This document shows, one piece after another, positions 3,243 to 61,120 of a DNA stretch of 64,000 nt. The stretch spans positions 124,001-188,000 of the IMG/VR virus record IMGVR_UViG_3300050821_013430; one strand, given 5' to 3'. Numbering within the stretch: the stretch's first letter is position 1; each line of letters begins with the position of its first letter. The notes beneath the pieces were generated by a model. That model had not been told where the DNA came from. It did not search any database and saw only the letters and a program-made list of their open reading frames with translations. Made by a program: the position numbers and the translations under genes.

Positions 3243-3290
3243 CTAGATTACCTCTTACAAAATGCCGCAAGAGCCCTATATCCAAAGTGA

Positions 3291-5165
3291 TCAAAATTTT
3301 CTGGAAATATAGGCCCCAACTACAAGGGGCTGTTCTTTTTGACCCGGCATAAGATTACCGACCATACCTTTGGTTGTAAAACCTTTAGTAATATGAAATT
3401 TGTAAGCAAGGTATGCATTTAATAGCGCGGCTAACCCATCGTTCGGGCTACTACCTTTTACATAATGAATTTGAGGGTCACCAGATCTAGAAATAGATGG
3501 TTTAATATCCATACTAGAACAATGTTGAACTAACCAAGCAATTTTTTCATAACTACCATAGGGAAATTTTACCTCTCCTCGTTTTAATTTGTCAAATAAT
3601 TCGGCCAGATAAAAATCTTTCTCAAAAATGATTTCTTTTGGAAATGTATCTTTACTGAACTTAACTTTGTCATTAATTTTGTTATGAGCTCTAGAAACTA
3701 GATAACGATCCCCATAAATGTTAGCAAGAATTTCAGAAAAATCATTTGAATATCCAATATCTCCGACCGCCAATCTAACATTGTATCGACGCATAATTTG
3801 ATCGATAGCCGCTTTCTTACTTTCTACATCATTGTACCTAAATTTGGTAGCATATTCGATAGAAAGAATAGTTGGAGTACGTGGTACAATTAAAACTGCA
3901 CTGCTAAATGATTGACCCCTATCTTTATACTTTTCTGGATTTGCAATGGCTTCCAAATCTGATTTGGCACCATAGTCAATTCCTAAAAAAGCAACCATTT
4001 CATCAGCAGGAGTGATTTGATTCCGCATCTTTCTACCGGGCTCACCGCACTGCTCTCGAATTTCCTCAGCAGTAATTGGAGTTGAATCGCCGTGATAAAA
4101 CTCCCCCAATACTTCATTTTTATATGCACGTTCGGTTTGAGTAGGATGAATGCCTGGCTTATTAGCCAAAATCTTTTCTTTAGTTAGATAAGGCATGAAT
4201 AATTGATTAATATGAAAACCAACATATAAACATTCATTAGAGTCTTTAGTGGAAACCCATTTTCCTCTTTCAGCGGACTCTCTCTTATCTTGTTCATGAT
4301 TACAGTGCGTACATTTTACAATGTAATCATAGAGCCAAATTTTTTCCCAGTCATCATTTTCCGGCGTACAAAGAGGAAAATGTTTTTTACAAGATTCACA
4401 TCCTAAATAATAATATTGTTGAGAAGACGCCAACCATCGTTTATGGAATGATGAGCCTTTTCTCTTGGGAGTACCAAAATATACTTGTACCCCTATACCT
4501 TCAGGACCATATTTAGAAGCGGTAAGGATTTTGACAGCATTATTGATGGCTTCATCAGTCATATCTTGCACTTCATCAAAAAAGAAAAAATCAGCAGTAC
4601 GTCCGCGAAGTCTATCAGCATCAATACCGGTTGAATCAATACGAATACTATTGCCATTAGAAAATTGTTTGAAACCTAATGAGTCTCCAGAATCACTATT
4701 TTTATCCAATAAACATTGCATATATGATTCTAAACGTTTAGCCTTTTTATCTGGATTTGTAATAATAGAGCCACTAATCATTGGATTAAGTTTAGTTTTA
4801 GTGTAATCGGCAGCCATTGCCAATTGAGGAAAAGCATGAATAATACGAGCGGGAGGCTTATCGCCGAATCCGAAAAGACCAGAGCCTGTAAAATACATTT
4901 CTAGGACCGCAGCCATAATAGTTCCACCTACCTGACGTCCCTTTACTAGTACTACCGGTTTTGCATCTTTTTCTAAAGCCTTAATGCCAATATAGCGATA
5001 AATATCCGCAAAAGGTTTAAATCCATTAGAATGAAGCCGAAAAGGCGAGCCCTCTAGAGTCAAATATTTTTCTGCAAAACCAACGGGGTCTAATTTGAGA
5101 ACATTTTCCTTGAAAAGAGAAAATAATTCTTCCTTGGGTGTCAAATGAGATGAATGAACCGGCAT
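3291..5165 (-). CDS. Terminase large subunit (GpA-like with Zn ribbon)
   Basis: Walker A-like VKGRQVGGT, Walker B FFFFDEVQD, coupling motif GTP, CxxC...CxxC, RNase H-like GIDYG and C-terminal PNDGL. Confidence 0.9.
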   Translation of the reverse strand: MPVHSSHLTPKEELFSLFKENVLKLDPVGFAEKYLTLEGSPFRLHSNGFKPFADIYRYIGIKALEKDAKPVVLVKGRQVGGTIMAAVLEMYFTGSGLFGFGDKPPARIIHAFPQLAMAADYTKTKLNPMISGSIITNPDKKAKRLESYMQCLLDKNSDSGDSLGFKQFSNGNSIRIDSTGIDADRLRGRTADFFFFDEVQDMTDEAINNAVKILTASKYGPEGIGVQVYFGTPKRKGSSFHKRWLASSQQYYYLGCESCKKHFPLCTPENDDWEKIWLYDYIVKCTHCNHEQDKRESAERGKWVSTKDSNECLYVGFHINQLFMPYLTKEKILANKPGIHPTQTERAYKNEVLGEFYHGDSTPITAEEIREQCGEPGRKMRNQITPADEMVAFLGIDYGAKSDLEAIANPEKYKDRGQSFSSAVLIVPRTPTILSIEYATKFRYNDVESKKAAIDQIMRRYNVRLAVGDIGYSNDFSEILANIYGDRYLVSRAHNKINDKVKFSKDTFPKEIIFEKDFYLAELFDKLKRGEVKFPYGSYEKIAWLVQHCSSMDIKPSISRSGDPQIHYVKGSSPNDGLAALLNAYLAYKFHITKGFTTKGMVGNLMPGQKEQPLVVGAYISRKF

Positions 5166-5171
5166 AAATAA

Positions 5172-5834
5172 TTACTTTACTTTGGATGGCATCAAAATAT
5201 GCCACGCGTCTCGATTAGAAGCATCTATATCCTCTTCATCGAAGTGATGTAGCTTACCTAAAGAATCGGCATTTGATTCGGCATCTGGATATTTACGCTT
5301 AACCTCTATATTTTTGTCATTAAGATATTTGAGAAAATTAGGATCATCCCAGTCTGCATCACTAGCATCCGACCGATGAATGGCTTTTATTCTTTCAATA
5401 ATTGATGGGATGGGCAAATTTCCACGACTATCTTCTATACAATTATTAGCGGTTGATTTAACCTGAGGACATTTTCTAAAAAGAGCGATTGGCTCTGACG
5501 AATCATTGGCTTTTTTGATTTGCTCTGCGCGCGCTTTTACCTGCTTCCAATAAGCACTAATACCGCTTCTTTCTTGCATATCTTCTACCGCAGCCTCAAC
5601 AGTAGGATATTTCGATTTATTCCCCATGATGGAAGAAATCTGATCATAAAGAGAACGTTGTTCTACATCTTTTCGAGACTCTACGCTGCTTTTTTCTAAA
5701 TTTTTAGCAAAATCGCGAAGCCAAGAAGGTTCTGTTGAAGAATCTTCTACCGAATAAGATTCTCGTGTAATGAGTGGTAAGGTGCGATAAGAGTATTTTT
5801 TCATTGGGATTAAACTTGAAAATTTGGCATCCAA
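5172..5834 (-). CDS. Hypothetical protein (morphogenesis block)
   Basis: 220-aa ORF upstream of the terminase; the true start may be the second Met (MKKYSY). Confidence 0.55.
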   Translation of the reverse strand: MDAKFSSLIPMKKYSYRTLPLITRESYSVEDSSTEPSWLRDFAKNLEKSSVESRKDVEQRSLYDQISSIMGNKSKYPTVEAAVEDMQERSGISAYWKQVKARAEQIKKANDSSEPIALFRKCPQVKSTANNCIEDSRGNLPIPSIIERIKAIHRSDASDADWDDPNFLKYLNDKNIEVKRKYPDAESNADSLGKLHHFDEEDIDASNRDAWHILMPSKVK

Positions 5835-10517: not shown

Positions 10518-11237
10518 TTACTTATTATATCCGTGCAGTCGCTCTTCTCTAGTATTAAAGATTGCATGAGTTTGATCGAGTTCGGAGGCTGGCCCCTGCA
10601 ATGCAACTGATCCGCCTGGGACACGCTCTCCCCGTTCGGTAGTGTATCCAAGAGCATAATTATATACTTTACCATCTAATGAGCATTTCCATATTGAATC
10701 ATCTACTCTTTGCATTTGCGCACCAGCATGATCTGGGCACGATCTTGTTTGTAATGGGGCTTCCATAATTCGGTATGCTTTACTAAACGGGCTTTTTTCA
10801 ATTGCCTTTTCTGCCTCTGCAACATGATTTACTTCATGAAGTTGTTCTCTTGTTGATTGATAATTATTTTTGATAGAATCTATTTTTCCATCTTGTTTTT
10901 GTTTGAATTTTTTAGCCCAATCTGGCGGAGCCGCAACAGTCAACAAAAGCTCATCAATTACGGAAGCCGCTTTTTTCAGATCTACATCGCCAGACATATC
11001 AAGAGCGGTAGTCATCGTATTCAATTGATCCAAATTTTCTGTAGTAAGAATCGATTCTGCTTGCGGCTCTAGGTGTTCTAATTCCTCGGCCCCTTGACGT
11101 AAAATAGTAGCGGCCTGAACACAAACCTGAGCCGCTTTGGTTAGGCAGGCTTCATCGTATTCGGCTAACATCAGAGCCTCATTATCGGGACTTTCTAGCC
11201 AACTGGCAACTGCTGCTAAAAATTCTGCAATTCTCAT
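10518..11237 (-). CDS. Hypothetical protein with C-terminal Cys/His motif
   Basis: 239-aa ORF; CPDH...C motif. Confidence 0.55.
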   Translation of the reverse strand: MRIAEFLAAVASWLESPDNEALMLAEYDEACLTKAAQVCVQAATILRQGAEELEHLEPQAESILTTENLDQLNTMTTALDMSGDVDLKKAASVIDELLLTVAAPPDWAKKFKQKQDGKIDSIKNNYQSTREQLHEVNHVAEAEKAIEKSPFSKAYRIMEAPLQTRSCPDHAGAQMQRVDDSIWKCSLDGKVYNYALGYTTERGERVPGGSVALQGPASELDQTHAIFNTREERLHGYNK

Positions 11238-11884
11238 TTGATTTCCTTTTTGGTAAGTCTTTGTTCTTCCTCTTGAATTTCTTTATCAAGTCGATTTAGC
11301 AAAGAACGTAAAACGGAAGGACGTTTTATTCGGCCTTTGACCGGACTTTCTATGGGCCCGTAGTGCCAAGTGGGGATTGTTTTTTGCTGTAAAATGGCGT
11401 TTGCTTCTGGCGTATCCAAACCAACTCCTCGTAAGTCGTGTACATTAATCAATGCCTTAGTATGCTTCCAAATGTACTCTTGAATGCTCTGAATCGCCTC
11501 ATCAAGACGATACATTTTGTCTCTTGGATACTTCATTTTGATAATAACATTGCGAAGATCATTGAGAGCATCAATGATTTTCACCGAATAATTGAAATTC
11601 TCTTTTAGAGTTTGTCCTTCTATATTGGCCACATATAAGTCTATTAGCGATTTGAAAACCTTGAAAAGGTGATCTTTGCCCAATTCATTATTTATTTCAA
11701 TAAAAGAGGGTAATTGAGTGATATTTTTGGCTAATCGATCATAAACTAAAATCAGACGATCTTTTAATAATCTAGTCTTTTTGGCATTTATAGGCACACC
11801 AAATGAGGTATCCGCTCCCTCAGAATCTGGAAGCTCCTGAGCATACTTGAAGGATAGCTTGGCAGCAAGAGAGGATAAACTCAT
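11234..11884 (-). CDS. Hypothetical protein
   Basis: 216-aa ORF; short N-terminal leader ending in KYAQ. Confidence 0.55.
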   Translation of the reverse strand: MSLSSLAAKLSFKYAQELPDSEGADTSFGVPINAKKTRLLKDRLILVYDRLAKNITQLPSFIEINNELGKDHLFKVFKSLIDLYVANIEGQTLKENFNYSVKIIDALNDLRNVIIKMKYPRDKMYRLDEAIQSIQEYIWKHTKALINVHDLRGVGLDTPEANAILQQKTIPTWHYGPIESPVKGRIKRPSVLRSLLNRLDKEIQEEEQRLTKKEIK

Positions 11885-11890
11885 TCATTG

Positions 11891-13501
11891 TTATCCGAAA
11901 ATTTTTGTATGCATCATATATAATTCTTCAGTAGTTTCATCCATTCCCTTCCGATACATTGGATGACAATTACCAAACTTATCAACATAAATTTTATGTA
12001 GAGGAAGTCCGGTATGACCGCAAAGAGGATATTTGCTGGTTTTGCTCTGAATTACTAAAGAACATTGCTCTTCTTTAGAAGCAACTTTCTCCAAAGAAAG
12101 ACCATCTTTGTATAGATTGAAAGCGATGGCATATGCTTTGATATCTCCGGAAGTATGAAGAATATTAAGGGCGTCTTCTGCCTTAGATAGATTCTTTTCG
12201 GACATTGCTTGACGAACATTTTCAATTAATTCTGATGGTTTCAGTCCATATTGCGGAGAAGTAATGGCCATCGCGCGAGTATCTGTCTTCTCTTCTGTCA
12301 TTGCTCTTTGTAATTCTTTGACAGTAAGGCTTGAAATTGATCCATTACATAGGAAAAGATCAGGAGATTGCACGCGATTATTAACCATCTTAACTGGCAC
12401 TTTAATAGCCAATTGGCCATTATGAGCCGAAACAGCATAGAAAATAGTATTTTCAGAGCAGTCTGCTACTTTGACAATAACATGAGAAATGCCTAGTTGG
12501 GCTAAGATGCGACGGACAGCATCTGATCCCAGGGCCACTTTATCACGACCAAAGTGTAATTCTGCAGCACCTTCGGGTGTGCTGAATTTCTCGGCAAAAC
12601 TTTCAAATTCAGGTGATTTAGGCATCTGCACTTCGGTAGGCAAAGTATCTAAACTTTGCCCTAATATCGAATTGGTATGATATTCTTGTTGAGGAGTACG
12701 AGAAGCATTGATCTTAGTAAGTGCCATTTCTACTTGGCTTACTTCTGTTTTGGGATGTACCGCTGAAGCTAGTACCTGTGCTACGTCAGTAGACCTAACC
12801 TTGAGGGTTTGGCCTGCTTGCGAAAGGATATAATCTTTCAAATTTGAGTGATTTAACTCAAAAGGCCCTGCATTTCCCATAAAAAAGGTTGGCTCTAATA
12901 CTTTATTTTGATTAACTTCTACTGGCACTAAAACGGAAGTTGTGCCCTTGGGAGTATCGTAATCGGCTCGTACTACAATGAAATGCTCATTGCCACCATC
13001 AATTGAAAGTTTGCTTGCTTTAAGATTCCAAGCATCTAGATTCTGATTGACAACTAATTGGGCCCTATCGGCGTGTTGCTTAGCGAATGGTTTGAATGGA
13101 ATAGAGGCATCAAAAGCAGTAGCTAGAGCATTAGAAAGCACCGGGTCAGCCACTGATTCGTGCAGATTGGCGAGAGGTAGGTCTTGTTTGGGTTGGGGTG
13201 CAACCTGTTCAACTACTACTTTTTCTCCCAGCTCATTTTGGAAAAAATGAGCAAACTTAGTATTACGAGTGTAAAAACGCGTATAAATATCTTTCAATTC
13301 TGCGCGAGTAATTAACATTTTATTGTTGCTTTCCGCTTTGGAAAGAATTTGAGTAACCGCTCCGATAGTGCTATCATTAGGATATTCAGATGCTAATTTT
13401 TGTAATTTGACATTGAGAAGCGAGAGTGAAAAACTTTCGCGTCGATCTAATGTTTGTGAAACGGAAGAGACTAATTTATTCAGGCTGTGATTATGGTTCA
13501 T
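11891..13501 (-). CDS. Hypothetical virion-like protein with internal duplication
   Basis: 536 aa; two similar segments (VLVPVEVNQNKVLEPTFFMGNAG / IKVPVKMVNNRVQSPDLFLCNGS). Confidence 0.6.
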   Translation of the reverse strand: MNHNHSLNKLVSSVSQTLDRRESFSLSLLNVKLQKLASEYPNDSTIGAVTQILSKAESNNKMLITRAELKDIYTRFYTRNTKFAHFFQNELGEKVVVEQVAPQPKQDLPLANLHESVADPVLSNALATAFDASIPFKPFAKQHADRAQLVVNQNLDAWNLKASKLSIDGGNEHFIVVRADYDTPKGTTSVLVPVEVNQNKVLEPTFFMGNAGPFELNHSNLKDYILSQAGQTLKVRSTDVAQVLASAVHPKTEVSQVEMALTKINASRTPQQEYHTNSILGQSLDTLPTEVQMPKSPEFESFAEKFSTPEGAAELHFGRDKVALGSDAVRRILAQLGISHVIVKVADCSENTIFYAVSAHNGQLAIKVPVKMVNNRVQSPDLFLCNGSISSLTVKELQRAMTEEKTDTRAMAITSPQYGLKPSELIENVRQAMSEKNLSKAEDALNILHTSGDIKAYAIAFNLYKDGLSLEKVASKEEQCSLVIQSKTSKYPLCGHTGLPLHKIYVDKFGNCHPMYRKGMDETTEELYMMHTKIFG

Positions 13502-14029: not shown

Positions 14030-14866
14030 TTATGGCTCTTTCTTTTGATCCCAATATTGACTACGAGCTTCCGACATCTTATCCTTGGTCTCTTCAGAAT
14101 GCCGCTTGCCAGCCCATTTGGTATAATTATTGAGAAGGGAGATATTATTACGTTCCAAAATTCGATAGATTTTACCGTTGCCACCGATATTGAATTGTTT
14201 TTTGATTTGATTGATGGTAGCACCGTCGAGATAGGCTTGAATGATCTGATTTTGGATTTCTTGTGGCAGCATCCGAGACTTGATGCGTTTTTCGATGGTT
14301 TCATCGGATTGTTTTCGACCAACTAATTTATCACTCATAGCTTGTTTAGATTCTTCGGTGTGATGCTTGCCTTGCATCGGATGACCTTGTTCCTGATGGC
14401 GTTGGATCATAAATTCGGAATTTTGATGTTTCCATTCTTCGGTATGAGGAGGTTTTGGTATTCCGGCATGAATTTTGGAAATTTTTTCTCTGGTTTCTTC
14501 GGAAACTTCTCTACCCATTAGAGCTTGAGAAATTTTTTGCTTACTTTCTTTAGAGTGCCTCCCATGACTTCCACCATCTTTTAGATTATAACCAATATCC
14601 GGATTTTTACTATTATACTGTTCTATATATTGGTCTTCTAACTTATCTGCAGTTTCTTGATCTGCGCACTCATCTAATATGCTATACTCAAAATTTTCCG
14701 ATCCATATTTACAAATAGCAGAATAGAGGTGATGAGAATTTTTATAGCCAATTCCATCTTTACCCATACGCTTATCAAAAGTCAGCCAAGTTTGTCCTAT
14801 ATAAACTTTACCATTGATTTTATTGATTAGTTTATAAATATTACACGTCATTTTACCATTTGTCAT
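14030..14866 (-). CDS. GIY-YIG homing endonuclease with NUMOD3 repeats
   Basis: IYKLINKINGKVYIGQT, GYN motif, repeated HSEESK/HTEESK NUMOD3 units. Confidence 0.9.
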   Translation of the reverse strand: MTNGKMTCNIYKLINKINGKVYIGQTWLTFDKRMGKDGIGYKNSHHLYSAICKYGSENFEYSILDECADQETADKLEDQYIEQYNSKNPDIGYNLKDGGSHGRHSKESKQKISQALMGREVSEETREKISKIHAGIPKPPHTEEWKHQNSEFMIQRHQEQGHPMQGKHHTEESKQAMSDKLVGRKQSDETIEKRIKSRMLPQEIQNQIIQAYLDGATINQIKKQFNIGGNGKIYRILERNNISLLNNYTKWAGKRHSEETKDKMSEARSQYWDQKKEP

Positions 14867-15299
14867 CTTTTAGGTCTCGAATTTTCTTCAGAATTTCAGA
14901 GATTTTTGGATCTTCTTCAATAAGTTTGAGCAATTTCTTTTTTGATCCTCCATATACACTTCTTGTTCCATTCTTATAATCTACGTTCCCATTGAGCGAC
15001 TTTGTGATCGACGACTGATTCACTTGTAATATCTTTGCTATCTCCATTTGTGTTTTCCCCTCCGCATACAACCTAATCACCTGCCGCTGCCTCTTAGTTA
15101 GCAATGTATTTACAATTCTCCAAAATTCCTTCTTCAATTCATCTTCTAGCATTAAAATATCTTCATTATAATCAAACGGGTTCAGACGACCATAAATACT
15201 ATCTTCATTAGAAAATGATTCCAACATTTCATTTGAGTACAGCGATTCGTGAAAAATTTGTTGATAATGATCCGAACGATTGGCGCGTTTTTCCATTGA
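14853..15299 (-). CDS. Sigma-70 region 4-like HTH protein (putative phage transcription factor)
   Basis: LTKRQRQVIRLYAEGKTQMEIAKILQVNQSSITKSL; likely start at MEKRAN. Confidence 0.7.
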   Translation of the reverse strand, partial: SMEKRANRSDHYQQIFHESLYSNEMLESFSNEDSIYGRLNPFDYNEDILMLEDELKKEFWRIVNTLLTKRQRQVIRLYAEGKTQMEIAKILQVNQSSITKSLNGNVDYKNGTRSVYGGSKKKLLKLIEEDPKISEILKKIRDLKDDKW

Positions 15300-15318
15300 G
15301 TATCCTTGTAGGTAAGTA

Positions 15319-16098
15319 TTATACGCTGACATTTGTCTTGTCTAACAGACTAATTGAATCGTGATGACGAAGATATTCATCCAGGTCTTTATAGCCTTTG
15401 GGTAGGTATTGATTGTAATTAATTTTTACACCATGCTCAATTGTATCTAATCTTTTAGCAACTGACTTACGACCTTGTTCTCCGGCATCATCATTGTCAA
15501 AAAGTAGAACAATTTTATTGGTATATCTTGCAAGAAGAGAGAATTGATAAGAAGTAAGAGTAGAGTTGCCAACAGCAACAATATTATAAATGCCTTTCTC
15601 AAAAGCTTTGATTACATCAAATTGGCCCTCCACCACATAGACAAAGCCTTCTGATAGGATATAAGATTTAGCCTCAAATAGACCAAATAAATGATTACCC
15701 TTGAGAAAGGAAGTATTTCTATACTTTTCAATGCCTAGATTTTTACGATCTTTCTCGGAAAGAAGAGTACGACCAATCAAAGCAATTACGTTGCCATAAA
15801 TGTCTCGATAAGGCATTATTAGTGGGTGACGTTCAAAAAAGTTGAAATTAGCATTACGAGTAGAACTGGAATCATAAATCCGCCAACCATACAATAAACC
15901 TAATTTTTTAAGTATCTCTTCCCCAACCAAAGAAGATAGTAGTGTAAGAAATTCTATACTTGGAAAATATCCAAAGGCAAACAATTTTTGCATTTCATAG
16001 CTAAGCCGAGAATTCAAATAATTTCTACACTCCTCGGCTTGAGGGGTTTCTTGAAGCAAAAACTGGCATGGTTGTAAAAGAGATTGAAAATCTGTCAT
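15319..16098 (-). CDS. dnaG: DNA primase, DnaG catalytic/TOPRIM domain only (no Zn finger)
   Basis: YLNSR, IGR, KYRNT, VVEGQFDV, LFDNDDAG, KDLDE motifs. Confidence 0.85.
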   Translation of the reverse strand: MTDFQSLLQPCQFLLQETPQAEECRNYLNSRLSYEMQKLFAFGYFPSIEFLTLLSSLVGEEILKKLGLLYGWRIYDSSSTRNANFNFFERHPLIMPYRDIYGNVIALIGRTLLSEKDRKNLGIEKYRNTSFLKGNHLFGLFEAKSYILSEGFVYVVEGQFDVIKAFEKGIYNIVAVGNSTLTSYQFSLLARYTNKIVLLFDNDDAGEQGRKSVAKRLDTIEHGVKINYNQYLPKGYKDLDEYLRHHDSISLLDKTNVSV

Positions 16099-18670: not shown

Positions 18671-18689
18671 ACCCGTAATATATCGGGAG

Positions 18690-18727
18690 AAAAAGAAAGG
18701 CCCAAGTCGCTAAACCCGGGCCTTTCT
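18690..18727 (-). terminator. Rho-independent terminator after the SSB gene
   Basis: Minus strand reads AGAAAGGCCCGGG-loop-TTGGGCCTTTCT followed by a T tract. Confidence 0.75.
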
Positions 18728-21395: not shown

Positions 21396-21890
21396 TTATT
21401 CCCAACCTGTTTTTTCTTGTGTTAGCGCACTATATCCAAGGATGCCGCGCTTGAACCCTGCGGCAATATCTTTGTAATGATGATGGCTCTTGATCAAAAT
21501 ATCGTATTTCTTTTCAAGAAGAGATTTACTTCCCTTAGCGCGGGCCAAGCGGATAGCTAAGTCTTCTACCTCTGGTGAGGATTCTGCTGCAAATTTTCTC
21601 ATCTCCATTGTAGCACGAGAGCCATCTGGCGCTGTATAGCCTAATGCCACTCGATTTTTGGTAGCATTTACCTGAGACTCTAAATAACTAACCGTTTTGA
21701 TTAGACGCGCCAAATACTCAGAGAGTGTATCTGCTGCGGATAGAGCGCGCTGTTGCTGCAACTCCGCATGAGCCAGGTCGATAGCATCCGTATCTCTTAG
21801 TTTGATGAGAACTAGTTGAATTTCCGTCAGATCAAACTTGAGAAATTCATCTTCTAATTCAGAGCCAATTAGTTGCTCTAATGTGGTCAT
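21396..21890 (-). CDS. Coiled-coil protein, possible UvsY-like recombination mediator
   Basis: Helical 164-aa ORF immediately upstream of recA. Confidence 0.4.
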   Translation of the reverse strand: MTTLEQLIGSELEDEFLKFDLTEIQLVLIKLRDTDAIDLAHAELQQQRALSAADTLSEYLARLIKTVSYLESQVNATKNRVALGYTAPDGSRATMEMRKFAAESSPEVEDLAIRLARAKGSKSLLEKKYDILIKSHHHYKDIAAGFKRGILGYSALTQEKTGWE

Positions 21891-26411: not shown

Positions 26412-26461
26412 AGTCTATATTTATATCAGACTATGCCCAGATCTCAAAATTATATCGCGGT

Positions 26462-33387: not shown

Positions 33388-33549
33388 CGATGTATGATAT
33401 ATCCCATACTTTTGAGTGGCAAGGGGTAAGGAAAACTAAGGATACGATTGTTGCACCTGTATGGTTCAATGTCGGGCACTAAGACGTTCATACGCTGGTA
33501 CTCGTAAATTACGGTATATTTGTTTCTACCTATTTTACAAATAAAAGTA

Positions 33550-41248: not shown

Positions 41249-41296
41249 TGATGTAATACTCCTGCCCTCACTATATCGGGACAGTCTACAGCCTAA

Positions 41297-44118: not shown

Positions 44119-44437
44119 TGGTTTCTCTTTGCTTGCGATATTTCTTCATACGAGCTTCTTTATTTTCTGCTTCGAAAGCCTTGCGACGTGATTCTGCCTG
44201 CTTACGACGTCTCTTGACGGAAGGCTTTTCATAAGATTGTCGTTCCTTATATGTAGAAAGGACTCTCTCTTTTTGTACAATAGCTCGAAAGGCTTTTAGG
44301 GCACGATCGAAATTATCACCGCGTACGATGACTTGTAAATGTTCAGCTTGAACTGGCACATGCTCATTTGTATTTTCACCTCCATTCAGACCGAGCTTAG
44401 CAAATTGTTTTGTTTCAGTTTGATTATCGCGTGTCAT
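44111..44437 (-). CDS. rpsU: 30S ribosomal protein bS21 with N-terminal extension
   Basis: VIVRGDNFDRALKAF...KERQSYEKPSVKRRRK. Confidence 0.88.
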   Translation of the reverse strand: MTRDNQTETKQFAKLGLNGGENTNEHVPVQAEHLQVIVRGDNFDRALKAFRAIVQKERVLSTYKERQSYEKPSVKRRRKQAESRRKAFEAENKEARMKKYRKQRETND

Positions 44438-44509
44438 AAAAAATATCTATCCTCGTTTGGGAGAAACTCTCCCATCGACCAATGATATATCCGTCTCTTC
44501 CAAAGATTT

Positions 44510-48540: not shown

Positions 48541-49147
48541 TAGAATCAGCTAGGTTATATTTTACCGCCTGCTCGGCGGTAAAAAACATATCCGTCTTAC
48601 AATCTTCTTTTAGCTTCTCCAAAGTTTGTCCGGTATGTTTAGATAATAAACGAATAAACATATCATTATGTTGCTTTATGAAATCTAAGTAATTTTCTGA
48701 ATCTACTTGAGTATCTCCTACCATTGGGAAAATACATTGAATGCCATGAATCATAACTTCGGCATGCTTGAAAATAAATCTCTTTCCTTTAGCACCAGTA
48801 GCTAAAAGCACGGCACCAGCCGAATAACATTTTCCAAGACAAATGGTTTTGACTGGTGCAGAAATCATCTGCATCACGTCATAAATATGGGTCAACGCAG
48901 CGACATCGCCTCCGACCGAATTGATGAAAATAGTAATATCTTCTTTTGGATCTAAATGATCATAATAAAGTAGCCATGCGGAAAGAGCGGATGAGACCTC
49001 AGTAGTAAAATCTTCATTGAGAAAGATGATTCGATCTTCTGCTAATTTGATGTAAGACTCAAAATATTTGGAAGGATGTAAATTGAATAATTTTTCTAAT
49101 CCTGGTGGAAGAAGAGGTAGGGGCGGTAATGGTACGGCTTTATTCAT
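48521..49147 (-). CDS. clpP: ClpP protease subunit (catalytic triad intact)
   Basis: DRIIFL, INSVGG, catalytic Ser in CYSAG, His in MIHG, Asp in KTDMFF, YNLAD. Confidence 0.9.
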   Translation of the reverse strand: MNKAVPLPPLPLLPPGLEKLFNLHPSKYFESYIKLAEDRIIFLNEDFTTEVSSALSAWLLYYDHLDPKEDITIFINSVGGDVAALTHIYDVMQMISAPVKTICLGKCYSAGAVLLATGAKGKRFIFKHAEVMIHGIQCIFPMVGDTQVDSENYLDFIKQHNDMFIRLLSKHTGQTLEKLKEDCKTDMFFTAEQAVKYNLADSIVEEIV

Positions 49148-49762
49148 TTATGATCTCTTTCCTAAAATTACACGATCAATAAGCCCAAAACTTTGAGCCT
49201 TCTTTGGTGTATAAAAAACTTTATGCTCAAATTCCGCCATTACTTTTGTAATTGAATTTTTACTATGTTTAGCCAATAATTCCATGAAATCTTTATTATC
49301 AGCTTGAAATCTTTTCATTTCAGTTTTAGCATTACCAACGGTAGAATAAAATCCACCTTCATGAGTAAGTTGCGAAGGACTAATCACCGCATTCGCGGTT
49401 GCGTGCCTAAGGCCTGGTGTCCCGGCCGCTAAAAGCAACACTGCTTCATTTTGCGCCATTCCGACACAATAGGTTTCAATTTGAGAACGAACTAATTGCA
49501 TCATATCATAAATCATAAATGTATTCCGAATATCTCCTCCATCTGAATTGATAAAAAGAGAAATTTTTTGAGTAGTATCCTCAAAATCTCGTAATAAAAG
49601 AGTTGCAATCGTATCTGTCGCCATCTGATCATCAATACGACCATTGATGAAAAGAATTCGATCGTTTGCTAGCTTGGCGAAAATATCGATAGGTACCACA
49701 CCCATTTCAGTCTGTTCAGCGGTTATAGTATTCAAATAATTATCGCGCTCCTCTCTTTGCAA
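49148..49762 (-). CDS. ClpP-like subunit, catalytically inactive (ClpR-like)
   Basis: DIFAKLANDRILF, INSDGG, FGLID present; Ser position reads AQNEA and His position reads SPSQL. Confidence 0.8.
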   Translation of the reverse strand: MQREERDNYLNTITAEQTEMGVVPIDIFAKLANDRILFINGRIDDQMATDTIATLLLRDFEDTTQKISLFINSDGGDIRNTFMIYDMMQLVRSQIETYCVGMAQNEAVLLLAAGTPGLRHATANAVISPSQLTHEGGFYSTVGNAKTEMKRFQADNKDFMELLAKHSKNSITKVMAEFEHKVFYTPKKAQSFGLIDRVILGKRS

Positions 49763-50087
49763 TCATTTCTTGTTCTTCTGCACATGAAATACATAAAGTA
49801 AAATATGGATTAGTTTCTAATCTTTTTTCATTGATTTGATCCGAACACTCTTCACAAAATCCAAAAGTATTATTCTGAATTTTAGTTAGAGCGTTTTCTA
49901 TTTTTTTCATTTTTTCTGTATCTCTATAATTCAATTGACTTATCAAAGCAACTAATATATTTCCTTGAATTTCATCAGTTTCATCTCCATCCACATCAAT
50001 TTCATTATCCCGATGCGGTTTAGAAAGTAAAAGATTTTTTTGATTTATAAGACTCTTTTTGATTTTTTCGATTACTGTTTTTCTCAT
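49740..50087 (-). CDS. dksA: DksA/TraR C4 zinc-finger protein
   Basis: Coiled-coil tip GDETDEI; ALTKI...FGFCEECSDQINEKRL..P...CISC; likely start MRKTVI. Confidence 0.85.
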   Translation of the reverse strand: MRKTVIEKIKKSLINQKNLLLSKPHRDNEIDVDGDETDEIQGNILVALISQLNYRDTEKMKKIENALTKIQNNTFGFCEECSDQINEKRLETNPYFTLCISCAEEQEMIAKRGAR

Positions 50088-51599: not shown

Positions 51600-51950
51600 C
51601 TAATCAATTATATCAGTACTTTCCTTGATTTCCAATTCAACATTCTTTTTGATCATTCGTTGATAAAAATCACAATCCAATTTCTCTTCATCGGTCGCGC
51701 ATTCTAAATGCCAACCCCTACCATTTTGGCAAAAAATAAAATCTCCCGGCAAATAAACACGATTACATTTTTCACATTTACCACTAAATTTTGATGGAAG
51801 GTAAATGATTTTACCATCATTCCGAGGAGTACATTTTAGTTTGCCATCTCGGATCATTTTGGCGATCTCGACCGCCGCGCCCGGGCTACCGTTCTCGTTG
51901 AAACAGTCCAAATAATAATTGAAAGCGTTTTGAATTTTGTTGTTGATCAT
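51600..51950 (-). CDS. Hypothetical protein with Zn-binding motif
   Basis: SKFSGKCEKC...PGD.I...WHLEC. Confidence 0.55.
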   Translation of the reverse strand: MINNKIQNAFNYYLDCFNENGSPGAAVEIAKMIRDGKLKCTPRNDGKIIYLPSKFSGKCEKCNRVYLPGDFIFCQNGRGWHLECATDEEKLDCDFYQRMIKKNVELEIKESTDIID

Positions 51951-52324
51951 TCTGGGAAGGGATGAGGGAGTATAATTGGGGGCCCAAAGAGTGTCAAGAG
52001 CAAACTATATTCTAATCAATTTGGAGATCTAAAATACATTATGACATTCTTACTATTTACATATTTACATTTCTACATGTATACATTTCGCCCGCGCGTA
52101 TATAATGTGTCCATCTTTTGGAATATAAGAGGCGCGCTCCTATACGCCTCTATAAAACGTCGGAGGGGTAGGGGCGGTCTCAGGTCGTTCTAAATATTTG
52201 GATTCGATACGGGTCAACCTCGTGCCAATACGGGCCTACCCAGCCCTCCCACCGGGTGGCCTAACCCCCGCAGGAATATCACCCTTGCTCAGGGAGGCGG
52301 ATATAGTCGGGCCGGAGTCAGCAT
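51951..52324. other. Largest non-coding region at a divergent strand switch, with ACAT repeats (candidate origin or regulatory hub)
   Basis: About 370 nt with no ORF; six ACAT cores (mostly TACAT) in 52031-52090, followed by a GC-rich tract. Confidence 0.4.
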
Positions 52325-55667: not shown

Positions 55668-55720
55668 TACAATTCCTTACTAATCAAAAATTAGAGACTG
55701 ACCTCTCTATATCTCGTCAG

Positions 55721-57569: not shown

Positions 57570-57764
57570 CGAATAGGTCATTAGTTCGGTTTCTGAAATT
57601 TCGGTCAAAAATTCTTCATTAGTGGTTTTGATTTTATAGGTAGGCACACCATTGATGAATACATTATCAAAACCTATAATAGTGGCAGCCACTTCGTAAT
57701 CACCAACCCAGGGATTGTATCTTTGGATTTTTACTCTTTGTCCAATTGAGAATTTAGCCTTCAT
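57567..57764 (-). CDS. Small KOW/SH3-like protein that also serves as the leader ORF ending MTYS-UAG
   Basis: KFSIGQRVKI...YKIK...ISETEL; GGATATA motif 9 nt upstream. Confidence 0.6.
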   Translation of the reverse strand: MKAKFSIGQRVKIQRYNPWVGDYEVAATIIGFDNVFINGVPTYKIKTTNEEFLTEISETELMTYS

Positions 57765-57781
57765 CTCTAACTATATATCCT

Positions 57782-58135
57782 TTATTTAGCAGCCAATTGT
57801 CGAAATACTTCGGTGGCCCACTCGTTCAATGCAGCCAAAATGAAATCCCAATCCGCTTCCGTCAAATCCTCATTGTTTTGCATTTTAGTATCTAACTGCA
57901 AAAGATAGAGCAGTTGATCGGTGAGATGATTGCTCTTCTCGTGCATATACTGCTCAAATAGGAAGAAAATTACCTTGCCGCTATCTTCCGAGCCGGGGTG
58001 GTAATTGATCGAGAAAAGTTCTTTGACCCAAGCCATATCCTCTTCGGAAGGTTTGACGCCCTCGTCGCGTAGGAAGCAGATGATGACGCTTAGCCGGGTG
58101 TAGCAGGAATGTAGATGTATGTTTTCAGGTGCCAT
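57782..58135 (-). CDS. Hypothetical protein
   Basis: Start at MAPENI (58135); the longer call overlaps the tmRNA 3' end. Confidence 0.55.
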   Translation of the reverse strand: MAPENIHLHSCYTRLSVIICFLRDEGVKPSEEDMAWVKELFSINYHPGSEDSGKVIFFLFEQYMHEKSNHLTDQLLYLLQLDTKMQNNEDLTEADWDFILAALNEWATEVFRQLAAK

Positions 58136-58154
58136 TGTCTTTCTCTGTAAATTT

Positions 58155-58506
58155 TGGAGCTGCCGAGCTTCGATGCCCGGGTCTCCCACACTCAATCCTA
58201 AAACTCATTCACAAACTTAGCAAGTGATATTAGCATTTGCACTAATCGAAGAGTTTTAGGTTCTTCGCGACCGATCTACTGTTGATTTCATTTGAGGCCC
58301 CGTAGCCAAACATCAAACTATTTTTCGTGGGTTAGCGTTCCTTTGACTACTAAAAATACCTCATCTCGGAACGTATGGGGCCCTTAGGCTGCCATAGCGA
58401 ATACTGTTTCGTCAGCGTTCAAACGTTGATCACTTTTTGACGAGGAGCAATCGTCCCCGGTTTGCGTTTTAGTTTCTCCTGCGAGATCGAAATCCAATTC
58501 AGCCCC
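58155..58506 (-). ncRNA. ssrA: tmRNA, tag (A)ADETVFAMAA
   Basis: 5' GGGGCTGAATTGGATTTCGA and 3' CAGCTCC-A give an acceptor stem with G3:U70. Tag frame GCT GAC GAA ACA GTA TTC GCT ATG GCA GCC TAA at 58416-58384. Length 352 nt; CCA not encoded. Confidence 0.92.
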
Positions 58507-58522
58507 GTTATCCTATGTAATT

Positions 58523-58786: not shown

Positions 58787-58805
58787 TCGTGCTTTCTCAA
58801 TATAA

Positions 58806-59351: not shown

Positions 59352-59398
59352 TATTCTCTCGCTTTCAATGAGAGATTATATCGACACTTCCGCGTTTA

Positions 59399-59740
59399 TC
59401 AATCGTATTCCAACCAAAAATAATGAATGAAATATGCTACATCGTTAGGGTCATACCAATCGAGATCGCCGTAATGCTTTACGAAATCCTTGATGGCGTT
59501 ATGGGGTAGGTTATGTTTGATTTCCTCGAAGGCTCTGGCCTGCGACATTGGCGGTTCGTTGCCTTCGTCCAACGGAGTGGCGGTTGGGTCATCCCACGGC
59601 TCTAAGGGCTCTTCTTCGGGCTGGTCTAACTGCTCGCGCCGGATGCCCTCAAACATTCCTTCTTGGGCAAGTTTCTCAAAAATAATACATCGAGTGCGTA
59701 AATTACCGTATGCCATAGAAATAATGTTGAAATATGCCAA
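59399..59740 (-). CDS. Hypothetical protein
   Basis: 113 aa; FEKLAQ motif followed by an acidic region. Confidence 0.5.
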   Translation of the reverse strand: MAYFNIISMAYGNLRTRCIIFEKLAQEGMFEGIRREQLDQPEEEPLEPWDDPTATPLDEGNEPPMSQARAFEEIKHNLPHNAIKDFVKHYGDLDWYDPNDVAYFIHYFWLEYD

Positions 59741-60505
59741 TCAGTGTTTTTTGATGATATCTTGGAGAAATTCCTTTTCCGAAGTGAAAATCGGAACATC
59801 GGTATTTAGAGCCCAACGCTCTTTTACAATATCCTCGCCGTTGTAATTGATCGTCTCCGGGCGTCGGTAGCACACTACGCCTCTCCTAAATTCGACCGGA
59901 TACTCATAGAAATCAATTCCCGCTTCTTCTTTCAATAGTTTGATCTTCTCTTCCAAGGAAGTATCCATCAGCATCTCTTCGATTTCGTGTTTCCTATACT
60001 TCTTGATCAATTCATAGAAACAAGCCAGCCTAACTGCAATTTGGTGGGCTCGTTGCTGATGATATACCATAACATTTACTGCCTCAGTAAGATTAGGGAC
60101 GGTAAAAATCTTGCTCAAAAAGATGGGGTCGCCCGACAAATTTACTTCCAATTCTGCTGCAGCATCATTGAAATGGAGCGTGGCAAGAGAAGAAGCGGCA
60201 GAAATAATTTTGGAAACGGAATTATCATACCAAGGCTGAGTATCCAAAGTTTGATCGTTTCTTACAATTATTGTAATTTCATCGTTGAACGAATAAGCAA
60301 AAACTGCTCCCTCAATTTCTTGAACGAGATCGGCCATCGTGGCATAGAGGCATTGTCCAAGTTCCAAAGAAAATGGTTTTGGTAGCAAGGAAGTGATCTT
60401 GCTGAAATTTCTTCCGTTGAGATTGATGATCAGCGGCACTCGGGGCATCAGTCTCGGGTCGCAAATATCCTCATAACTTGTAATTCTGGCTTTCAGTGGC
60501 TGCAT
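59741..60505 (-). CDS. Thg1-like protein (tRNA-His guanylyltransferase / 3'-5' polymerase family)
   Basis: YE...P.II.LNGRNFS.T...KPF, YSFNDEI, SKIISAASS, FRRGV. Confidence 0.85.
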   Translation of the reverse strand: MQPLKARITSYEDICDPRLMPRVPLIINLNGRNFSKITSLLPKPFSLELGQCLYATMADLVQEIEGAVFAYSFNDEITIIVRNDQTLDTQPWYDNSVSKIISAASSLATLHFNDAAAELEVNLSGDPIFLSKIFTVPNLTEAVNVMVYHQQRAHQIAVRLACFYELIKKYRKHEIEEMLMDTSLEEKIKLLKEEAGIDFYEYPVEFRRGVVCYRRPETINYNGEDIVKERWALNTDVPIFTSEKEFLQDIIKKH

Positions 60506-61120
60506 TTATTTTGTCTTTATTTGTCGTACTATATCGAGAAGAACGGTTCTAATGTTGCCACCAACCTTACTATACAGCGTGGCATTTATCGCACCGTCAG
60601 GAATTGCCGGAGATTGAATTTGATTTGTCAAAATGCTAACGGTTTGCATTCGATTAGCGGTAGGAACGGGAGCGGCGAAATCATAACCATTATTTTTGAT
60701 CATCCTACGAAAAACTAATTTTCCAAGATTGGCCAAGGCACTAACCAATGGTGTATAAGCGCTCGTGTCAATGCCGAAAGACTGATCGTAAAGTCTTGCA
60801 AAATCCAGTTTGCCATTAGAAGTAATGTAGATGGCCTGATTGAGCGCATTGACTAATTGACGAATGAAATTGAGATTGTTGGCACCCCATCCTAAAACCA
60901 AGGTCGGGGAGACGGTAGCAGGATCAAAAGGTCGTGGGGAGCCAGAAACAACGGTCGGAGTAGTTGATGTAGCGGTAGAAGCGGGCGAGGACGGAGCAGC
61001 GGGAGCGGCGGGAGTTGCTGCTTGTGCCAGTCGAAATAATGTCCTAAGTCTGCCGTTCATATAAGAAATGTCGGAAAAACGCCTTCGTCTTTTCGGATAT
61101 AGGGACTGGTATGAAAACAC
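60506..61120 (-). CDS. Hypothetical virion-like protein
   Basis: RLAQ followed by an Ala/Pro/Thr linker; true start probably MNGRLR. Confidence 0.5.
   Translation of the reverse strand: MFSYQSLYPKRRRRFSDISYMNGRLRTLFRLAQAATPAAPAAPSSPASTATSTTPTVVSGSPRPFDPATVSPTLVLGWGANNLNFIRQLVNALNQAIYITSNGKLDFARLYDQSFGIDTSAYTPLVSALANLGKLVFRRMIKNNGYDFAAPVPTANRMQTVSILTNQIQSPAIPDGAINATLYSKVGGNIRTVLLDIVRQIKTK

What the first reader, a model, noticed from the sequence alone, without database searches (positions are those of the whole stretch)
3277..61101. Recurring SGATATA promoter-like motif, often 8-10 nt before the start codon
(G/C)GATATA occurs on the coding strand shortly upstream of starts at 3277-3283 (portal), 18679-18685 (ruvC, 8 nt, right after a terminator), 26451-26457 (tnpB), 33398-33404 (exonuclease, 10 nt), 41272-41278 (def), 44486-44492 (bS21), 57774-57780 (amber-operon leader, 9 nt), 59377-59383, and on the plus strand at 52299-52305 and 61095-61101 (9 nt). 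AGATATA occurs near 55708. The orientation always follows the gene. The short spacings have no clear SD, suggesting leaderless mRNAs. Inference: a phage-specific promoter, possibly read with the sigma-region-4-like protein at 14853-15299.
Basis: partly seen in the sequence, partly recalled or inferred. Interest (0 to 1): 0.6.

Follow-up and report, generated by a model that had tools for sequence, protein, structure and literature searches.

The report
Phage promoter motif for leaderless genes
A short DNA word, GATATA, sits at a fixed distance (about 9 bases) in front of many gene starts in this 473-kb soil phage and its relatives. It is most likely a phage-specific promoter element that yields messenger RNAs starting at or next to the start codon: a real signal, but of a kind already known from other phages.

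Summary
All listed sites exist. GATATA is the most enriched hexamer in the 40 nt before gene starts across the whole 472,749-bp phage genome (43 seen, 6.5 expected; with two preceding G/C bases, 27 vs 2.2). It is orientation-specific. The gap to the start codon peaks sharply at 9 nt (8-11 nt, no Shine-Dalgarno), with a second broad class at 17-60 nt that does carry a Shine-Dalgarno sequence.

An internal calibration supports the leaderless reading. Canonical TTGACA-N16-18-TAnnnT promoters in the same genome end 6-7 nt before ORF-opening start codons. That is the register obtained if TATAnn inside GATATAnn is the -10 hexamer and G sits at -14.

About a third of sites also carry an A-tract (AAA/AAAC) 13-20 bp upstream. 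The GATATA-N9-ATG pattern recurs in seven of eight related huge phages that carry an orthologue of a 209-aa sigma-70-family gene. That gene lies outside the window. The pattern is absent in three relatives without a clear orthologue.

No RNA data exist, so start sites and the reading factor are inferred. Verdict: real, a new member of a known kind (phage sigma-type promoter class with leaderless mRNAs).

The parts
18679..18685 (-). CGATATA, 8 nt before the RuvC ATG (18670). Leaderless-type site, no Shine-Dalgarno.
   Evidence: The Pfam RuvC match starts at residue 5, so this ATG is the true N-terminus.
18688..18726 (-). Hairpin plus T-run (intrinsic-terminator-like) ending just before the RuvC motif.
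   Evidence: It is one of only two motif genes with such a terminator upstream.
33398..33404 (-). GGATATA, 10 nt before the exonuclease ATG (33387). Leaderless-type. Part of the 8-bp palindrome GATATATC.
57774..57780 (-). GGATATA, 9 nt before the ATG at 57764 of a 65-aa ORF. Leaderless-type.
61095..61101 (+). GGATATA, 9 nt before the ATG at 61111 (116-aa phosphatase/kinase-like protein). An AAAAAC tract lies 15 nt upstream. Leaderless-type.
26422..26427 (-). GATATA, 10 nt before the tnpB ATG (26411). It lies in the loop of a TAGTCT/AGACTA inverted repeat, so it may belong to the IS element's end rather than to a phage promoter.
   Evidence: The TnpB HTH domain starts at residue 1.
26451..26457 (-).
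51609..51614 (-). GATATA, 12 nt before the ATG at 51596.
10526..10532 (-). GGATATA, 14 nt before the ATG at 10511, inside the 3' end of the upstream ORF.
52299..52305 (+). GGATATA, 19 nt before the ATG at 52325. Leadered class.
41272..41278 (-). CGATATA, 23 nt before the def ATG (41248), with an AGGAG Shine-Dalgarno in between. Leadered class.
59375..59402 (-). CGATATAAT preceded by TTGATA at a 16-nt spacing. Here the motif overlaps a near-consensus sigma-70-type promoter, 25 nt before the ATG at 59351.
   Evidence: (11 of 12 match).
3277..3283 (-). GGATATA between the TerL stop and the portal start (TTG 3242, 34 nt downstream, AAGAGG in between).
   Evidence: GATATA is kept at this place in 5 of the 6 relatives whose sequence covers it, while the flanks diverge (alignment A1). 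It is also kept before the portal orthologue in G001 and G005.
44486..44492 (-). GGATATA, 10 nt before a 13-codon upstream ORF (ATG 44475-44473). The upstream ORF's TGA overlaps the bS21 ATG (44437) as ATGA. The motif is 48 nt before bS21.
55708..55713 (-). GATATA (preceded by A), 40 nt before the start of a 62-aa ORF at 55667.
60530..60536 (-). CGATATA, 24 nt before the ATG at 60505, inside the upstream ORF. Weaker candidate. Others of this kind: 40379-40384, 24920-24926, 21431-21437, 63566-63572, 5226-5232.
14853..15332 (-). Not favoured as the specificity factor.

Best explanation
GATATA, usually preceded by G/C in this genome and by T in relatives, is the core of a phage-specific promoter.

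Proposed anatomy:
- It works as an extended -10-like element: G at about -14, A at -13, TATA at -12..-9.
- About a third of sites also carry an A-tract (AAA/AAAC) at about -34..-27.
- There is no TTGACA -35 box and no conserved T at -7.

Proposed mechanism:
- Host RNA polymerase starts 7-9 nt downstream of the motif.
- Where the start codon lies 8-11 nt after the motif, the mRNA therefore begins at or within 1-3 nt of the AUG (leaderless) and needs no Shine-Dalgarno.
- Where the start lies 17-60 nt downstream, an ordinary leader with a Shine-Dalgarno follows.
- The most likely specificity factor is the phage's own 209-aa sigma-70-family protein (regions 2 and 4) at G000:C1:2112-2741(-), about 121 kb before the window.

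Genes served:
- Replication and recombination: DnaB, RuvC, exonuclease.
- Structural: portal, tail sheath, tail fibre, protease-like.
- Translation-related: def, bS21.
- Many free-standing homing endonuclease genes.
- This mix suggests a middle/late class.

Shown: enrichment, orientation, spacing, lack of Shine-Dalgarno, register calibration, conservation, co-occurrence with the sigma gene.
Inferred: that it is a promoter, the start-site position, and which factor reads it.
For: 1. Enrichment and orientation.
- GATATA 43 vs 6.5 in -40..-1.
- SSGATATA 27 vs 2.2 in -60..-1.
- The reverse complement and AT-rich one-mismatch variants are barely enriched.

2. Spacing.
- Sharp peak at N9 (8-11 nt), then a gap, then a broad 17-60 nt class.
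- Strong Shine-Dalgarno pairing: 0 of 18 in the short class, 34% in the long class.
- 17 of 18 short-class starts are ATG.
- Domain matches begin at residues 1-5 for RuvC, TnpB and an HNH endonuclease, so these ATGs are the real starts.

3. Calibration.
- 57 TTGAC[AT]-N16-18-TAnnnT matches show a peak of 8 ORF-opening starts 6-7 nt after the -10 hexamer, and none at 0-5 nt.
- Leaderless layout is therefore general in this phage.
- TATAnn within GATATAnn falls in the same register (6-9 nt, peak 7).
- At 59377 the motif reads CGATATAAT with TTGATA at N16.

4. A second block.
- AAA at -20..-13 from the G: 21 of 59 upstream sites vs 22 of 201 other GATATA copies (p=3e-5), and 17 of 196 control intergenic windows.

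5. Conservation.
- Kept after the TerL stop in 5 of the 6 relatives whose sequence covers that place.
- Orthologue pairs share it in 7 of 29 cases vs 12 of 149 (p=0.018).
- Among all hexamers at -8..-11 before ORF-opening ATGs, GATATA ranks 1, 1, 2, 3, 4 and 6 in G008, G005, G006, G007, G000 and G010. It reaches p=0.006 in G001.

6. Link to the sigma gene.
- Genomes with a full-length orthologue (35-59% identity) show the signal in 7 of 8 cases.
- The eighth, G009, was only partly fetched (3 vs 1.1).
- G002, G003 and G004, which have no orthologue or only a weak one, show none: ranks 226, 812 and 1083.
- The sigma gene is conserved in 47 IMG/VR contigs.

7. No phage RNA polymerase was found.
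- No PF00562 match, only a weak PF00623 match (E=0.03), and no DxDGD motif in a long ORF.

8. Established knowledge.
- A TA-like signal about 10 bp upstream of a start codon marks leaderless genes in bacteria (PMC3160421).
Against: - There are no RNA data. The only runs holding the sequence are soil DNA metagenomes, so no start site is shown.
- T at -7, the most conserved base of sigma-70-type -10 elements, is not conserved. The analogy to a -10 hexamer is therefore partial.
- Terminators upstream of motif sites are no more common than elsewhere: 2 of 58 vs 18 of 669. Most short-spacing sites follow an upstream gene directly, so read-through transcripts should also exist.
- The sigma link rests on 11 related genomes that are not phylogenetically independent. 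The sigma-bearing genomes are also the closer relatives by TerL.
- G001 (sigma 59% identical) has only a weak signal, and G009 has none that is significant.
- The sigma's region 2.4/3.0 residues differ from sigma-70, but specificity cannot be read from that.
Confidence: 0.6

Rival explanations
1. The motif is a promoter, but a host sigma factor reads it with no phage factor. This could be the primary sigma using it as an extended -10 promoter, or a host alternative sigma. The phage sigma would then serve another gene set.
For: - In relatives the consensus is TGATATATA, which looks like an extended -10 (TGn + TATAnn).
- At 59377 the motif is part of a near-consensus TTGATA-N16-TATAAT promoter.
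- Extended -10 promoters need no -35 box (established knowledge).
- The motif is used by very different gene classes.
Against: - The same genome holds a separate set of canonical TTGACA-N17-TAnnnT promoters with T at -7.
- The GATATA class lacks T at -7 and TTGACA, and in G000 it has G/C rather than T at -15.
- The signal tracks the presence of the phage sigma orthologue across 11 genomes.
- The sigma-28 consensus GCCGATAA does not occur upstream of starts (0), and GATAAA is not clearly enriched.
Confidence: 0.2
2. GATATA acts at the RNA level as a Shine-Dalgarno substitute. It would be a translation-initiation signal 8-11 nt before the AUG on polycistronic mRNAs, perhaps used together with the phage's bS21 and IF1.
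For: - The fixed 8-11 nt spacing resembles ribosome-binding-site spacing.
- The short class has no Shine-Dalgarno.
- Most sites follow an upstream gene with no terminator between.
- The phage encodes bS21, IF1 and a tmRNA.
Against: - Two thirds of upstream sites lie 17-60 nt from the start and have their own Shine-Dalgarno. A ribosome-binding signal would not be kept there.
- The accompanying A-tract lies about 30 nt before the start.
- Canonical DNA promoters in this genome show the same register to the ATG.
- The motif has no complementarity to the anti-Shine-Dalgarno sequence.
Confidence: 0.07
3. The region-4-like HTH protein at 14853-15332 is the specificity factor. It would act as a split-sigma partner or as an activator.
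For: It matches Sigma70_r4, Sigma70_r4_2 and GerE, just under or around the cut-offs.
Against: - It has no region 2, so it cannot recognise or melt a -10-type element.
- It overlaps a GIY-YIG/NUMOD3 homing endonuclease gene.
- Three of the four other weak region-4 matches in the genome are inside HNH or LAGLIDADG endonucleases.
- It also matches a small-terminase family.
Confidence: 0.05
4. The pattern is not a regulatory signal of the phage. It would be sequence carried along with mobile homing-endonuclease cassettes, plus chance copies.
For: - 6 of the 18 short-spacing genes in G000 are homing-endonuclease-like.
- 9 of 26 such genes carry the motif, against 59 of 729 genes overall.
Against: - The flanks of these sites share nothing beyond AAAC and the motif.
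- In G001 and G005 none of the short-spacing genes is an endonuclease.
- Core genes (portal, sheath, DnaB, RuvC) carry the motif.
- It is conserved before the portal gene in three genomes.
Confidence: 0.03

Closest known systems
Phage T4 late promoters (TATAAATA, read by host RNA polymerase with gp55 and gp33)
   Same: - A short AT-rich -10-region word with no -35 box.
- Read by host polymerase carrying a phage sigma-like protein (PMC3014915).
- It serves structural genes and also homing endonuclease genes such as I-TevI, which have their own late promoter (PMC3014915).
   Different: - The word differs: TATAAATA occurs only 3 times upstream here.
- The candidate factor has both region 2 and region 4, unlike gp55. 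Its match to the gp55-type family phrog_234 is weak (5.6e-4).
- T4 late mRNAs carry leaders with Shine-Dalgarno sequences, whereas many here would be leaderless.
- Clamp coupling was not examined.
Bacillus phage SPO1 middle and late promoters (phage sigmas gp28 and gp34 on host polymerase)
   Same: - A large phage switches host polymerase from canonical early promoters to its own classes by small phage-encoded sigma factors (PMC13401047).
- From memory, not verified in the library: the SPO1 late -10 is GATATT, one base from GATATA.
   Different: - GATATT is not enriched upstream here (18 vs 28 expected).
- tblastn of the 209-aa sigma finds no cultured phage at all.
- A leaderless layout is not a feature of SPO1.
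Leaderless genes with a TA-like -10 signal about 10 bp before the start codon (Actinobacteria, Deinococcus-Thermus; from memory also the middle/late genes of Thermus phage phiYS40)
   Same: A promoter -10 element at a fixed short distance from the AUG, with no Shine-Dalgarno (PMC3160421). The canonical promoters of this phage show exactly that layout.
   Different: - The GATATA class lacks T at -7 and depends on G and A at -14 and -13.
- The host is unknown, so it cannot be said whether leaderless use is a host trait.
- The phiYS40 comparison is recalled, not checked.
Sigma-28 (FliA/SigD) promoters, TAAAGTTT-n11-GCCGATAA
   Same: An A-rich upstream block plus a -10 block containing (C/G)CGATA. 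The phage sigma also matches the FliA/WhiG model weakly (2e-8). Consensus taken from PMC2859248.
   Different: - GCCGATAA and CCGATAA are absent or not enriched upstream (0 and 2).
- The bases after GATA are TA, not AA.
- The A-tract lies 2-4 bp closer to the -10 block.

Membership tests
Leaderless-mRNA promoter of the sigma-70 type (-10 element 6-7 nt before the AUG) | TA-rich -10-like element at a fixed short distance from the start codon, with no Shine-Dalgarno | tested here: met
   Peak at N9 after GATATA, which is 7 nt after TATAnn. No strong Shine-Dalgarno in 0 of 18. Same register as the canonical promoters.
Leaderless-mRNA promoter of the sigma-70 type (-10 element 6-7 nt before the AUG) | Conserved T at -7 (TAnnnT) | tested here: not met
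   The position two bases after GATATA is A27 C10 G8 T14 in G000 and A29 C3 G14 T11 in relatives.
Leaderless-mRNA promoter of the sigma-70 type (-10 element 6-7 nt before the AUG) | Transcript 5' end at the A of the AUG | not testable with these tools
   No RNA run holds the sequence.
Extended -10 promoter (TGnTATAAT) | G at -14, with T at -15, directly upstream of the -10 hexamer | tested here: inconclusive
   G is required: AATATA and CATATA are not enriched. The preceding base is T in relatives (33 of 57) but G/C in G000 (41 of 59).
Sigma-28 / FliA-type promoter | -10 block GCCGATAA | tested here: not met
   0 GCCGATAA and 2 CCGATAA upstream. GATAAA is 19 vs 12.3.
T4-type late promoter | TATAAATA at -10, plus a gp55-type factor | tested here: not met
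   TATAAATA occurs 3 times upstream. The gp55-type family match is only 5.6e-4 over the N-terminal half.
SPO1-type late promoter | -10 GATATT (consensus recalled from memory) | tested here: not met
   GATATT is 0.64-0.69x of expectation upstream.
Single-subunit (T7-like) phage RNA polymerase promoter | The phage encodes a T7-like polymerase, and the promoter is about 20 bp and conserved | tested here: inconclusive
   No PF00940 match, but that search had no positive control anywhere. Conservation here spans only about 8 bp plus an A-tract.
Multisubunit phage RNA polymerase promoter (phiKZ/AR9-like) | The phage encodes beta/beta'-like subunits | tested here: not met
   No PF00562 match, PF00623 only at E=0.03, and no DxDGD motif in a long ORF. 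Very divergent subunits could still escape.
Sigma-70 family factor (the 209-aa protein at G000:2112-2741) | Region 2 and region 4 both present | tested here: met
   PF04542 at 27 bits and PF04545 at 22-25 bits. TIGR02937 at 6e-17. It aligns to region 2 and region 4 of SigA, SigB and RpoS.
Shine-Dalgarno ribosome-binding site | Complementarity to the 16S anti-Shine-Dalgarno sequence 5-10 nt before the start | tested here: not met
   Duplex energy in the short class has a median of -3.3 kcal/mol, and none is at or below -6. The genome's true Shine-Dalgarno words (AAAGGAG) form a separate enriched set.

The most novel reading that the evidence does not exclude
GATATA-N9-AUG may be the DNA face of a phage-run 'leaderless regulon'. 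A clade of 200-470-kb soil phages would use its own sigma to make AUG-first mRNAs, and its own translation parts would tilt host ribosomes towards them. Those parts are bS21, IF1, tmRNA and peptide deformylase, with no IF3. bS21 itself would be made through a leaderless 13-codon upstream ORF coupled by an ATGA overlap. Homing endonucleases would have adopted the same compact module so that they can spread as self-contained genes.
Probability: 0.1. Interest if true: 0.75.

Novelty: new member of a known kind. Interest (0 to 1): 0.4.

Why it matters
- It gives a testable transcription map for an uncultivated clade of very large soil phages. There are two promoter classes: a canonical TTGACA/TAnnnT class, probably early and read by the host sigma, and a GATATA class, probably dependent on the phage sigma. 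The candidate factor is conserved.
- It corrects start-codon calls. Genes 8-11 nt after GATATA start at that ATG with no ribosome-binding site.
- It shows that leaderless design is systematic in these phages, which says something about the unknown host's translation.
- It offers a compact, portable promoter-plus-start module that homing endonuclease genes appear to use.
- It does not reveal a new principle. Phage sigma-dependent promoter classes and leaderless phage mRNAs are both known.

Tried and rejected
- **Amber or other stop-codon recoding.** Adjacent long same-frame ORFs separated by one stop show no excess for TAG. The '57764 leader' ORF is followed by all three stop types. Rejected.
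None found.
- **Terminator-then-promoter architecture as general support.** Only 2 of 58 motif genes have it, no more than background.
- **Host inference from TnpB.** The best hits are Methanosarcinaceae at 55-57% identity, too distant to mean anything for a phage with a bacterial sigma, DnaE, bS21 and def. The host remains unknown.
- **Sigma against cultured phages.** tblastn found no match.
- **Motif statistics on short TerL-flank loci.** Confounded by in-frame GAT-ATA codons. Not used as evidence.
- **Motif statistics on sigma-flank loci.** Confounded by repeated orthologous sites. Not used as evidence. Whole genomes were used instead.
- **Literature search for GATATA as a phage promoter.** Nothing relevant.
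- **Other region-4 matches in the genome.** Three are homing endonucleases, not sigma factors.

Full report
**Setting**

The window is bases 124001-188000 of a single 472,749-bp contig. IMG/VR classes the contig as a virus record that is 100% complete by CheckV. The only runs that hold it are soil DNA metagenomes.

Gene content checked in the window:
- large terminase (3291-5165)
- portal (1362-3242)
- DnaE (26462-30001)
- RuvC, TnpB and a GIY-YIG/NUMOD3 endonuclease
- exonuclease, peptide deformylase and bS21

No close cultured relative exists: TerL is under 30% identical to Bacillus phages.

Yes.

In the window:
- SGATATA occurs 29 times against 18.3 +/- 4.1 in shuffles.
- 14 of 54 GATATA copies are intergenic, although only 4.1% of bases are (p=2e-8).

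I laid the whole genome in the Python box and built a crude gene model of 729 genes. On that model:
- GATATA is the single most enriched hexamer in the 40 nt before starts (43 vs 6.5). It ranks ahead of the Shine-Dalgarno words AAAGGA and AAGGAG.
- With one or two preceding G/C bases the enrichment rises to 6x and 12x.
- The reverse complement is only 16 vs 8.6, so the signal is oriented. AATATA, CATATA, GATATT, GATATC, GACATA and GATACA are not enriched. AT-richness of spacers therefore does not explain it.

**Spacing**

The distance from the end of GATATA to the start codon has a sharp peak at 9 nt: 3, 8, 4 and 2 sites at 8, 9, 10 and 11 nt. After that there is almost nothing up to 17 nt, and then a broad 17-60 nt class.

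A count that uses no gene model gives the same picture. GATATA-N9-ATG occurs 14 times, and 11 of these open ORFs of 60 aa or more. Five of six control hexamers show no comparable peak. The sixth, GAGATA, peaks only at 2-5 nt, where it overlaps Shine-Dalgarno words.

Further properties of the two classes:
- The short class has no strong Shine-Dalgarno pairing (0 of 18). The long class has it in 34% of cases.
- 17 of 18 short-class starts are ATG.
- For RuvC, TnpB and an HNH endonuclease the protein-domain match begins at residues 1-5. These ATGs are therefore the true N-termini, not artefacts of start calling.

**Internal calibration**

The genome also holds canonical TTGACA-N16-18-TAnnnT promoters. 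Among 57 such matches, ORF-opening start codons pile up 6-7 nt after the -10 hexamer: 8 cases, none at 0-5 nt, and 0-2 at any other distance.

This is the textbook layout of leaderless genes; a TA-like signal about 10 bp before the start codon is the accepted marker (PMC3160421). It shows that AUG-first mRNAs are a general design in this phage.

If TATAnn inside GATATAnn is taken as the -10 hexamer, its distance to the ATG is 6-9 nt with a peak at 7, the same register. G and A then sit at -14 and -13, the place of the extended -10 element. At 59377 the motif actually reads CGATATAAT with TTGATA 16 nt upstream, an 11 of 12 match.

The class differs from the canonical one in three ways:
- there is no TTGACA;
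- T at -7 is not conserved;
- the base at -15 is G/C.

A second, weaker block exists. AAA or AAAC lies 13-20 bp upstream of the G in 21 of 59 upstream sites. The comparison values are 22 of 201 for other GATATA copies and 17 of 196 for control intergenic windows (p=3e-5). An element about 30 nt before the start codon is hard to reconcile with a ribosome-binding signal.

**Which genes carry the motif?**

- In the window: RuvC, exonuclease, tnpB, a phosphatase/kinase-like gene, a 65-aa ORF, portal, def, bS21 and others.
- Elsewhere in the genome: DnaB helicase, a PhuZ-like tubulin, tail sheath, a tail-fibre protein, a protease-like 1216-aa protein, glycosyltransferase and a dehydrogenase.
- Homing endonucleases stand out. 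Six of the 18 short-spacing genes are homing-endonuclease-like (HNH, endonuclease VII, HTH-nuclease). 9 of the 26 such genes carry the motif, against 59 of 729 genes overall.

The flanks of the endonuclease sites share only AAAC and the motif. In G001 and G005 none of the short-spacing genes is an endonuclease. The motif is therefore a general phage signal that mobile genes in this genome have adopted. T4 intron and free-standing endonuclease genes similarly carry T4 late promoters (PMC3014915).

**Conservation**

- TerL relatives are abundant in IMG/VR and include contigs of 200-450 kb.
- Directly after the TerL stop, GATATA is kept in 5 of the 6 relatives whose sequence covers that place (one aligned locus ends before it), while the flanks diverge.
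- Reciprocal-best orthologues in G001 share an upstream GATATA in 7 of 29 cases against 12 of 149 (p=0.018). The portal gene and two other genes have it in three genomes.
- I ranked all 4096 hexamers at -8..-11 before ORF-opening ATGs:

| Genome | GATATA seen vs expected | Rank |
|---|---|---|
| G008 | 13 vs 1.5 | 1 |
| G005 | 9 vs 0.9 | 1 |
| G006 | 12 vs 1.5 | 2 |
| G007 | 7 vs 1.0 | 3 |
| G000 | 17 vs 1.6 | 4 |
| G010 | 6 vs 1.0 | 6 |
| G001 | 7 vs 2.1 | 60 |

- Most of these genomes show an N9 or N9-N10 peak. In G010 and G001 it is weak.
- These genomes span 31-45% GC and TerL identity down to 50%.
- In the relatives the consensus is TGATATATA.

**Who reads it?**

No phage RNA polymerase was found:
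- no PF00940 match, although that search has no positive control;
- no PF00562 match;
- PF00623 only at E=0.03;
- no DxDGD motif in a long ORF.

The genome has exactly one full sigma-70-family gene, 209 aa, at G000:C1:2112-2741(-):
- it has region 2 and region 4;
- TIGR02937 scores 6e-17;
- it aligns to regions 2 and 4 of SigA, SigB and RpoS, but with different residues at the positions that read -12 and the extended -10 in sigma-70;
- it has no match in cultured phages, yet it is conserved in 47 IMG/VR contigs.

Co-occurrence with the motif:
- Seven of eight genomes with a full-length orthologue (35-59% identity) show the GATATA signal.
- The eighth, G009, was fetched only in part and gives 3 vs 1.1.
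- G003 (no homologue), G002 (27% identity) and G004 (partial, 32%) show none.

This is suggestive, not proof. The sigma-bearing genomes are also the closer relatives.

It overlaps a GIY-YIG endonuclease gene and resembles the HTH modules found inside the genome's HNH and LAGLIDADG endonucleases. I rate it unlikely.

**Rivals**

- Host sigma alone, using the motif as an extended -10. This is the main rival (0.2). It is favoured by the TG in relatives and by the 59377 site. It is disfavoured by the missing T at -7, by the separate canonical class and by the tracking with the phage sigma.
- An RNA-level Shine-Dalgarno substitute (0.07). It is disfavoured by the long-spacing class, the A-tract and the calibration.
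- Hitch-hiking with endonuclease cassettes. This is largely refuted.

**Comparison with known systems**

- It works like T4 late promoters and SPO1 middle/late promoters: a phage sigma on host polymerase (PMC3014915, PMC13401047).
- It also works like leaderless promoters of bacteria (PMC3160421). From memory, not checked here, Thermus phage phiYS40 is a further example.
- It is not a member of the sigma-28 (GCCGATAA; PMC2859248), T4-late (TATAAATA) or SPO1-late (GATATT, from memory) consensus classes. Each word was tested and is not the enriched one.

**Limits**

- The gene model is my own crude ORF model.
- The high-GC third of the genome (240-420 kb) is full of small, doubtful ORFs.
- The host is unknown.
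- No transcript data exist.

Noticed in passing
window 58152-58506 (-): A phage-encoded tmRNA gene (Rfam RF00023, 71 bits, full length). ARAGORN missed it. The 137-aa ORF at 57782-58195 overlaps its 3' part and is probably spurious. A near-consensus TTGACA-N16-TATATT promoter lies upstream at 58826-58799.
   Followed up: partly
whole contig G000 (the window lies in the low-GC part): There is a strong GC gradient within one phage genome. It is 37-43% over 0-240 kb, where the long conserved genes and most GATATA promoters lie. It is 47-56% over 240-420 kb, where ORFs average about 130 aa and few motifs occur. The cause is unexplained: it could be a chimeric assembly, an acquired region or a distinct early region.
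   Followed up: partly
G000:C1, e.g. starts at 51650, 277246, 429911, 431844, 442814: Canonical TTGACA-N16-17-TAnnnT promoters end 6-7 nt before ORF-opening start codons. This second, host-type promoter class is also laid out for leaderless mRNAs.
   Followed up: yes
window 44437-44492 (-): A 13-codon upstream ORF starts 10 nt after GGATATA. It ends in a TGA that overlaps the bS21 ATG as ATGA. This suggests translational coupling of the phage ribosomal protein gene to a leaderless mini-ORF.
   Followed up: no
G000:C1, 26 genes (e.g. 48926-49963, 244702-245700, 315722-316579, 336498-337256, 365162-366202; window 14030-14866): The genome is unusually rich in homing-endonuclease-like genes (HNH, endonuclease VII, LAGLIDADG, GIY-YIG). 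Many sit in their own intergenic gap with the GATATA-N9-ATG module.
   Followed up: partly
G000:C1:436019-436174 (+) and 11812-13173 (-): The phage encodes an IF1 homologue (PF01176, 47.5 bits) but no detectable IF3. It also encodes a PhuZ-like tubulin.
   Followed up: no
window 25200-26460 (-): The closest genomic relatives of TnpB are in Methanosarcinaceae archaea (55-57% identity), which is odd for a phage with bacterial-type genes. The GATATA nearest its start lies in the loop of a TAGTCT/AGACTA inverted repeat that may be the IS end.
   Followed up: partly
window 33396-33403 and 44484-44491: At two sites the motif is part of the 8-bp palindrome GATATATC, so it reads the same on both strands.
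   Followed up: no
G000 upstream regions: Other over-represented upstream words were not explained: TGAAAGGA (12 vs 0.6, a Shine-Dalgarno with a fixed left context), TGTCCTCA (11 vs 2.1) and CTTGACAC (5 vs 0.3, an extended -35).
   Followed up: no
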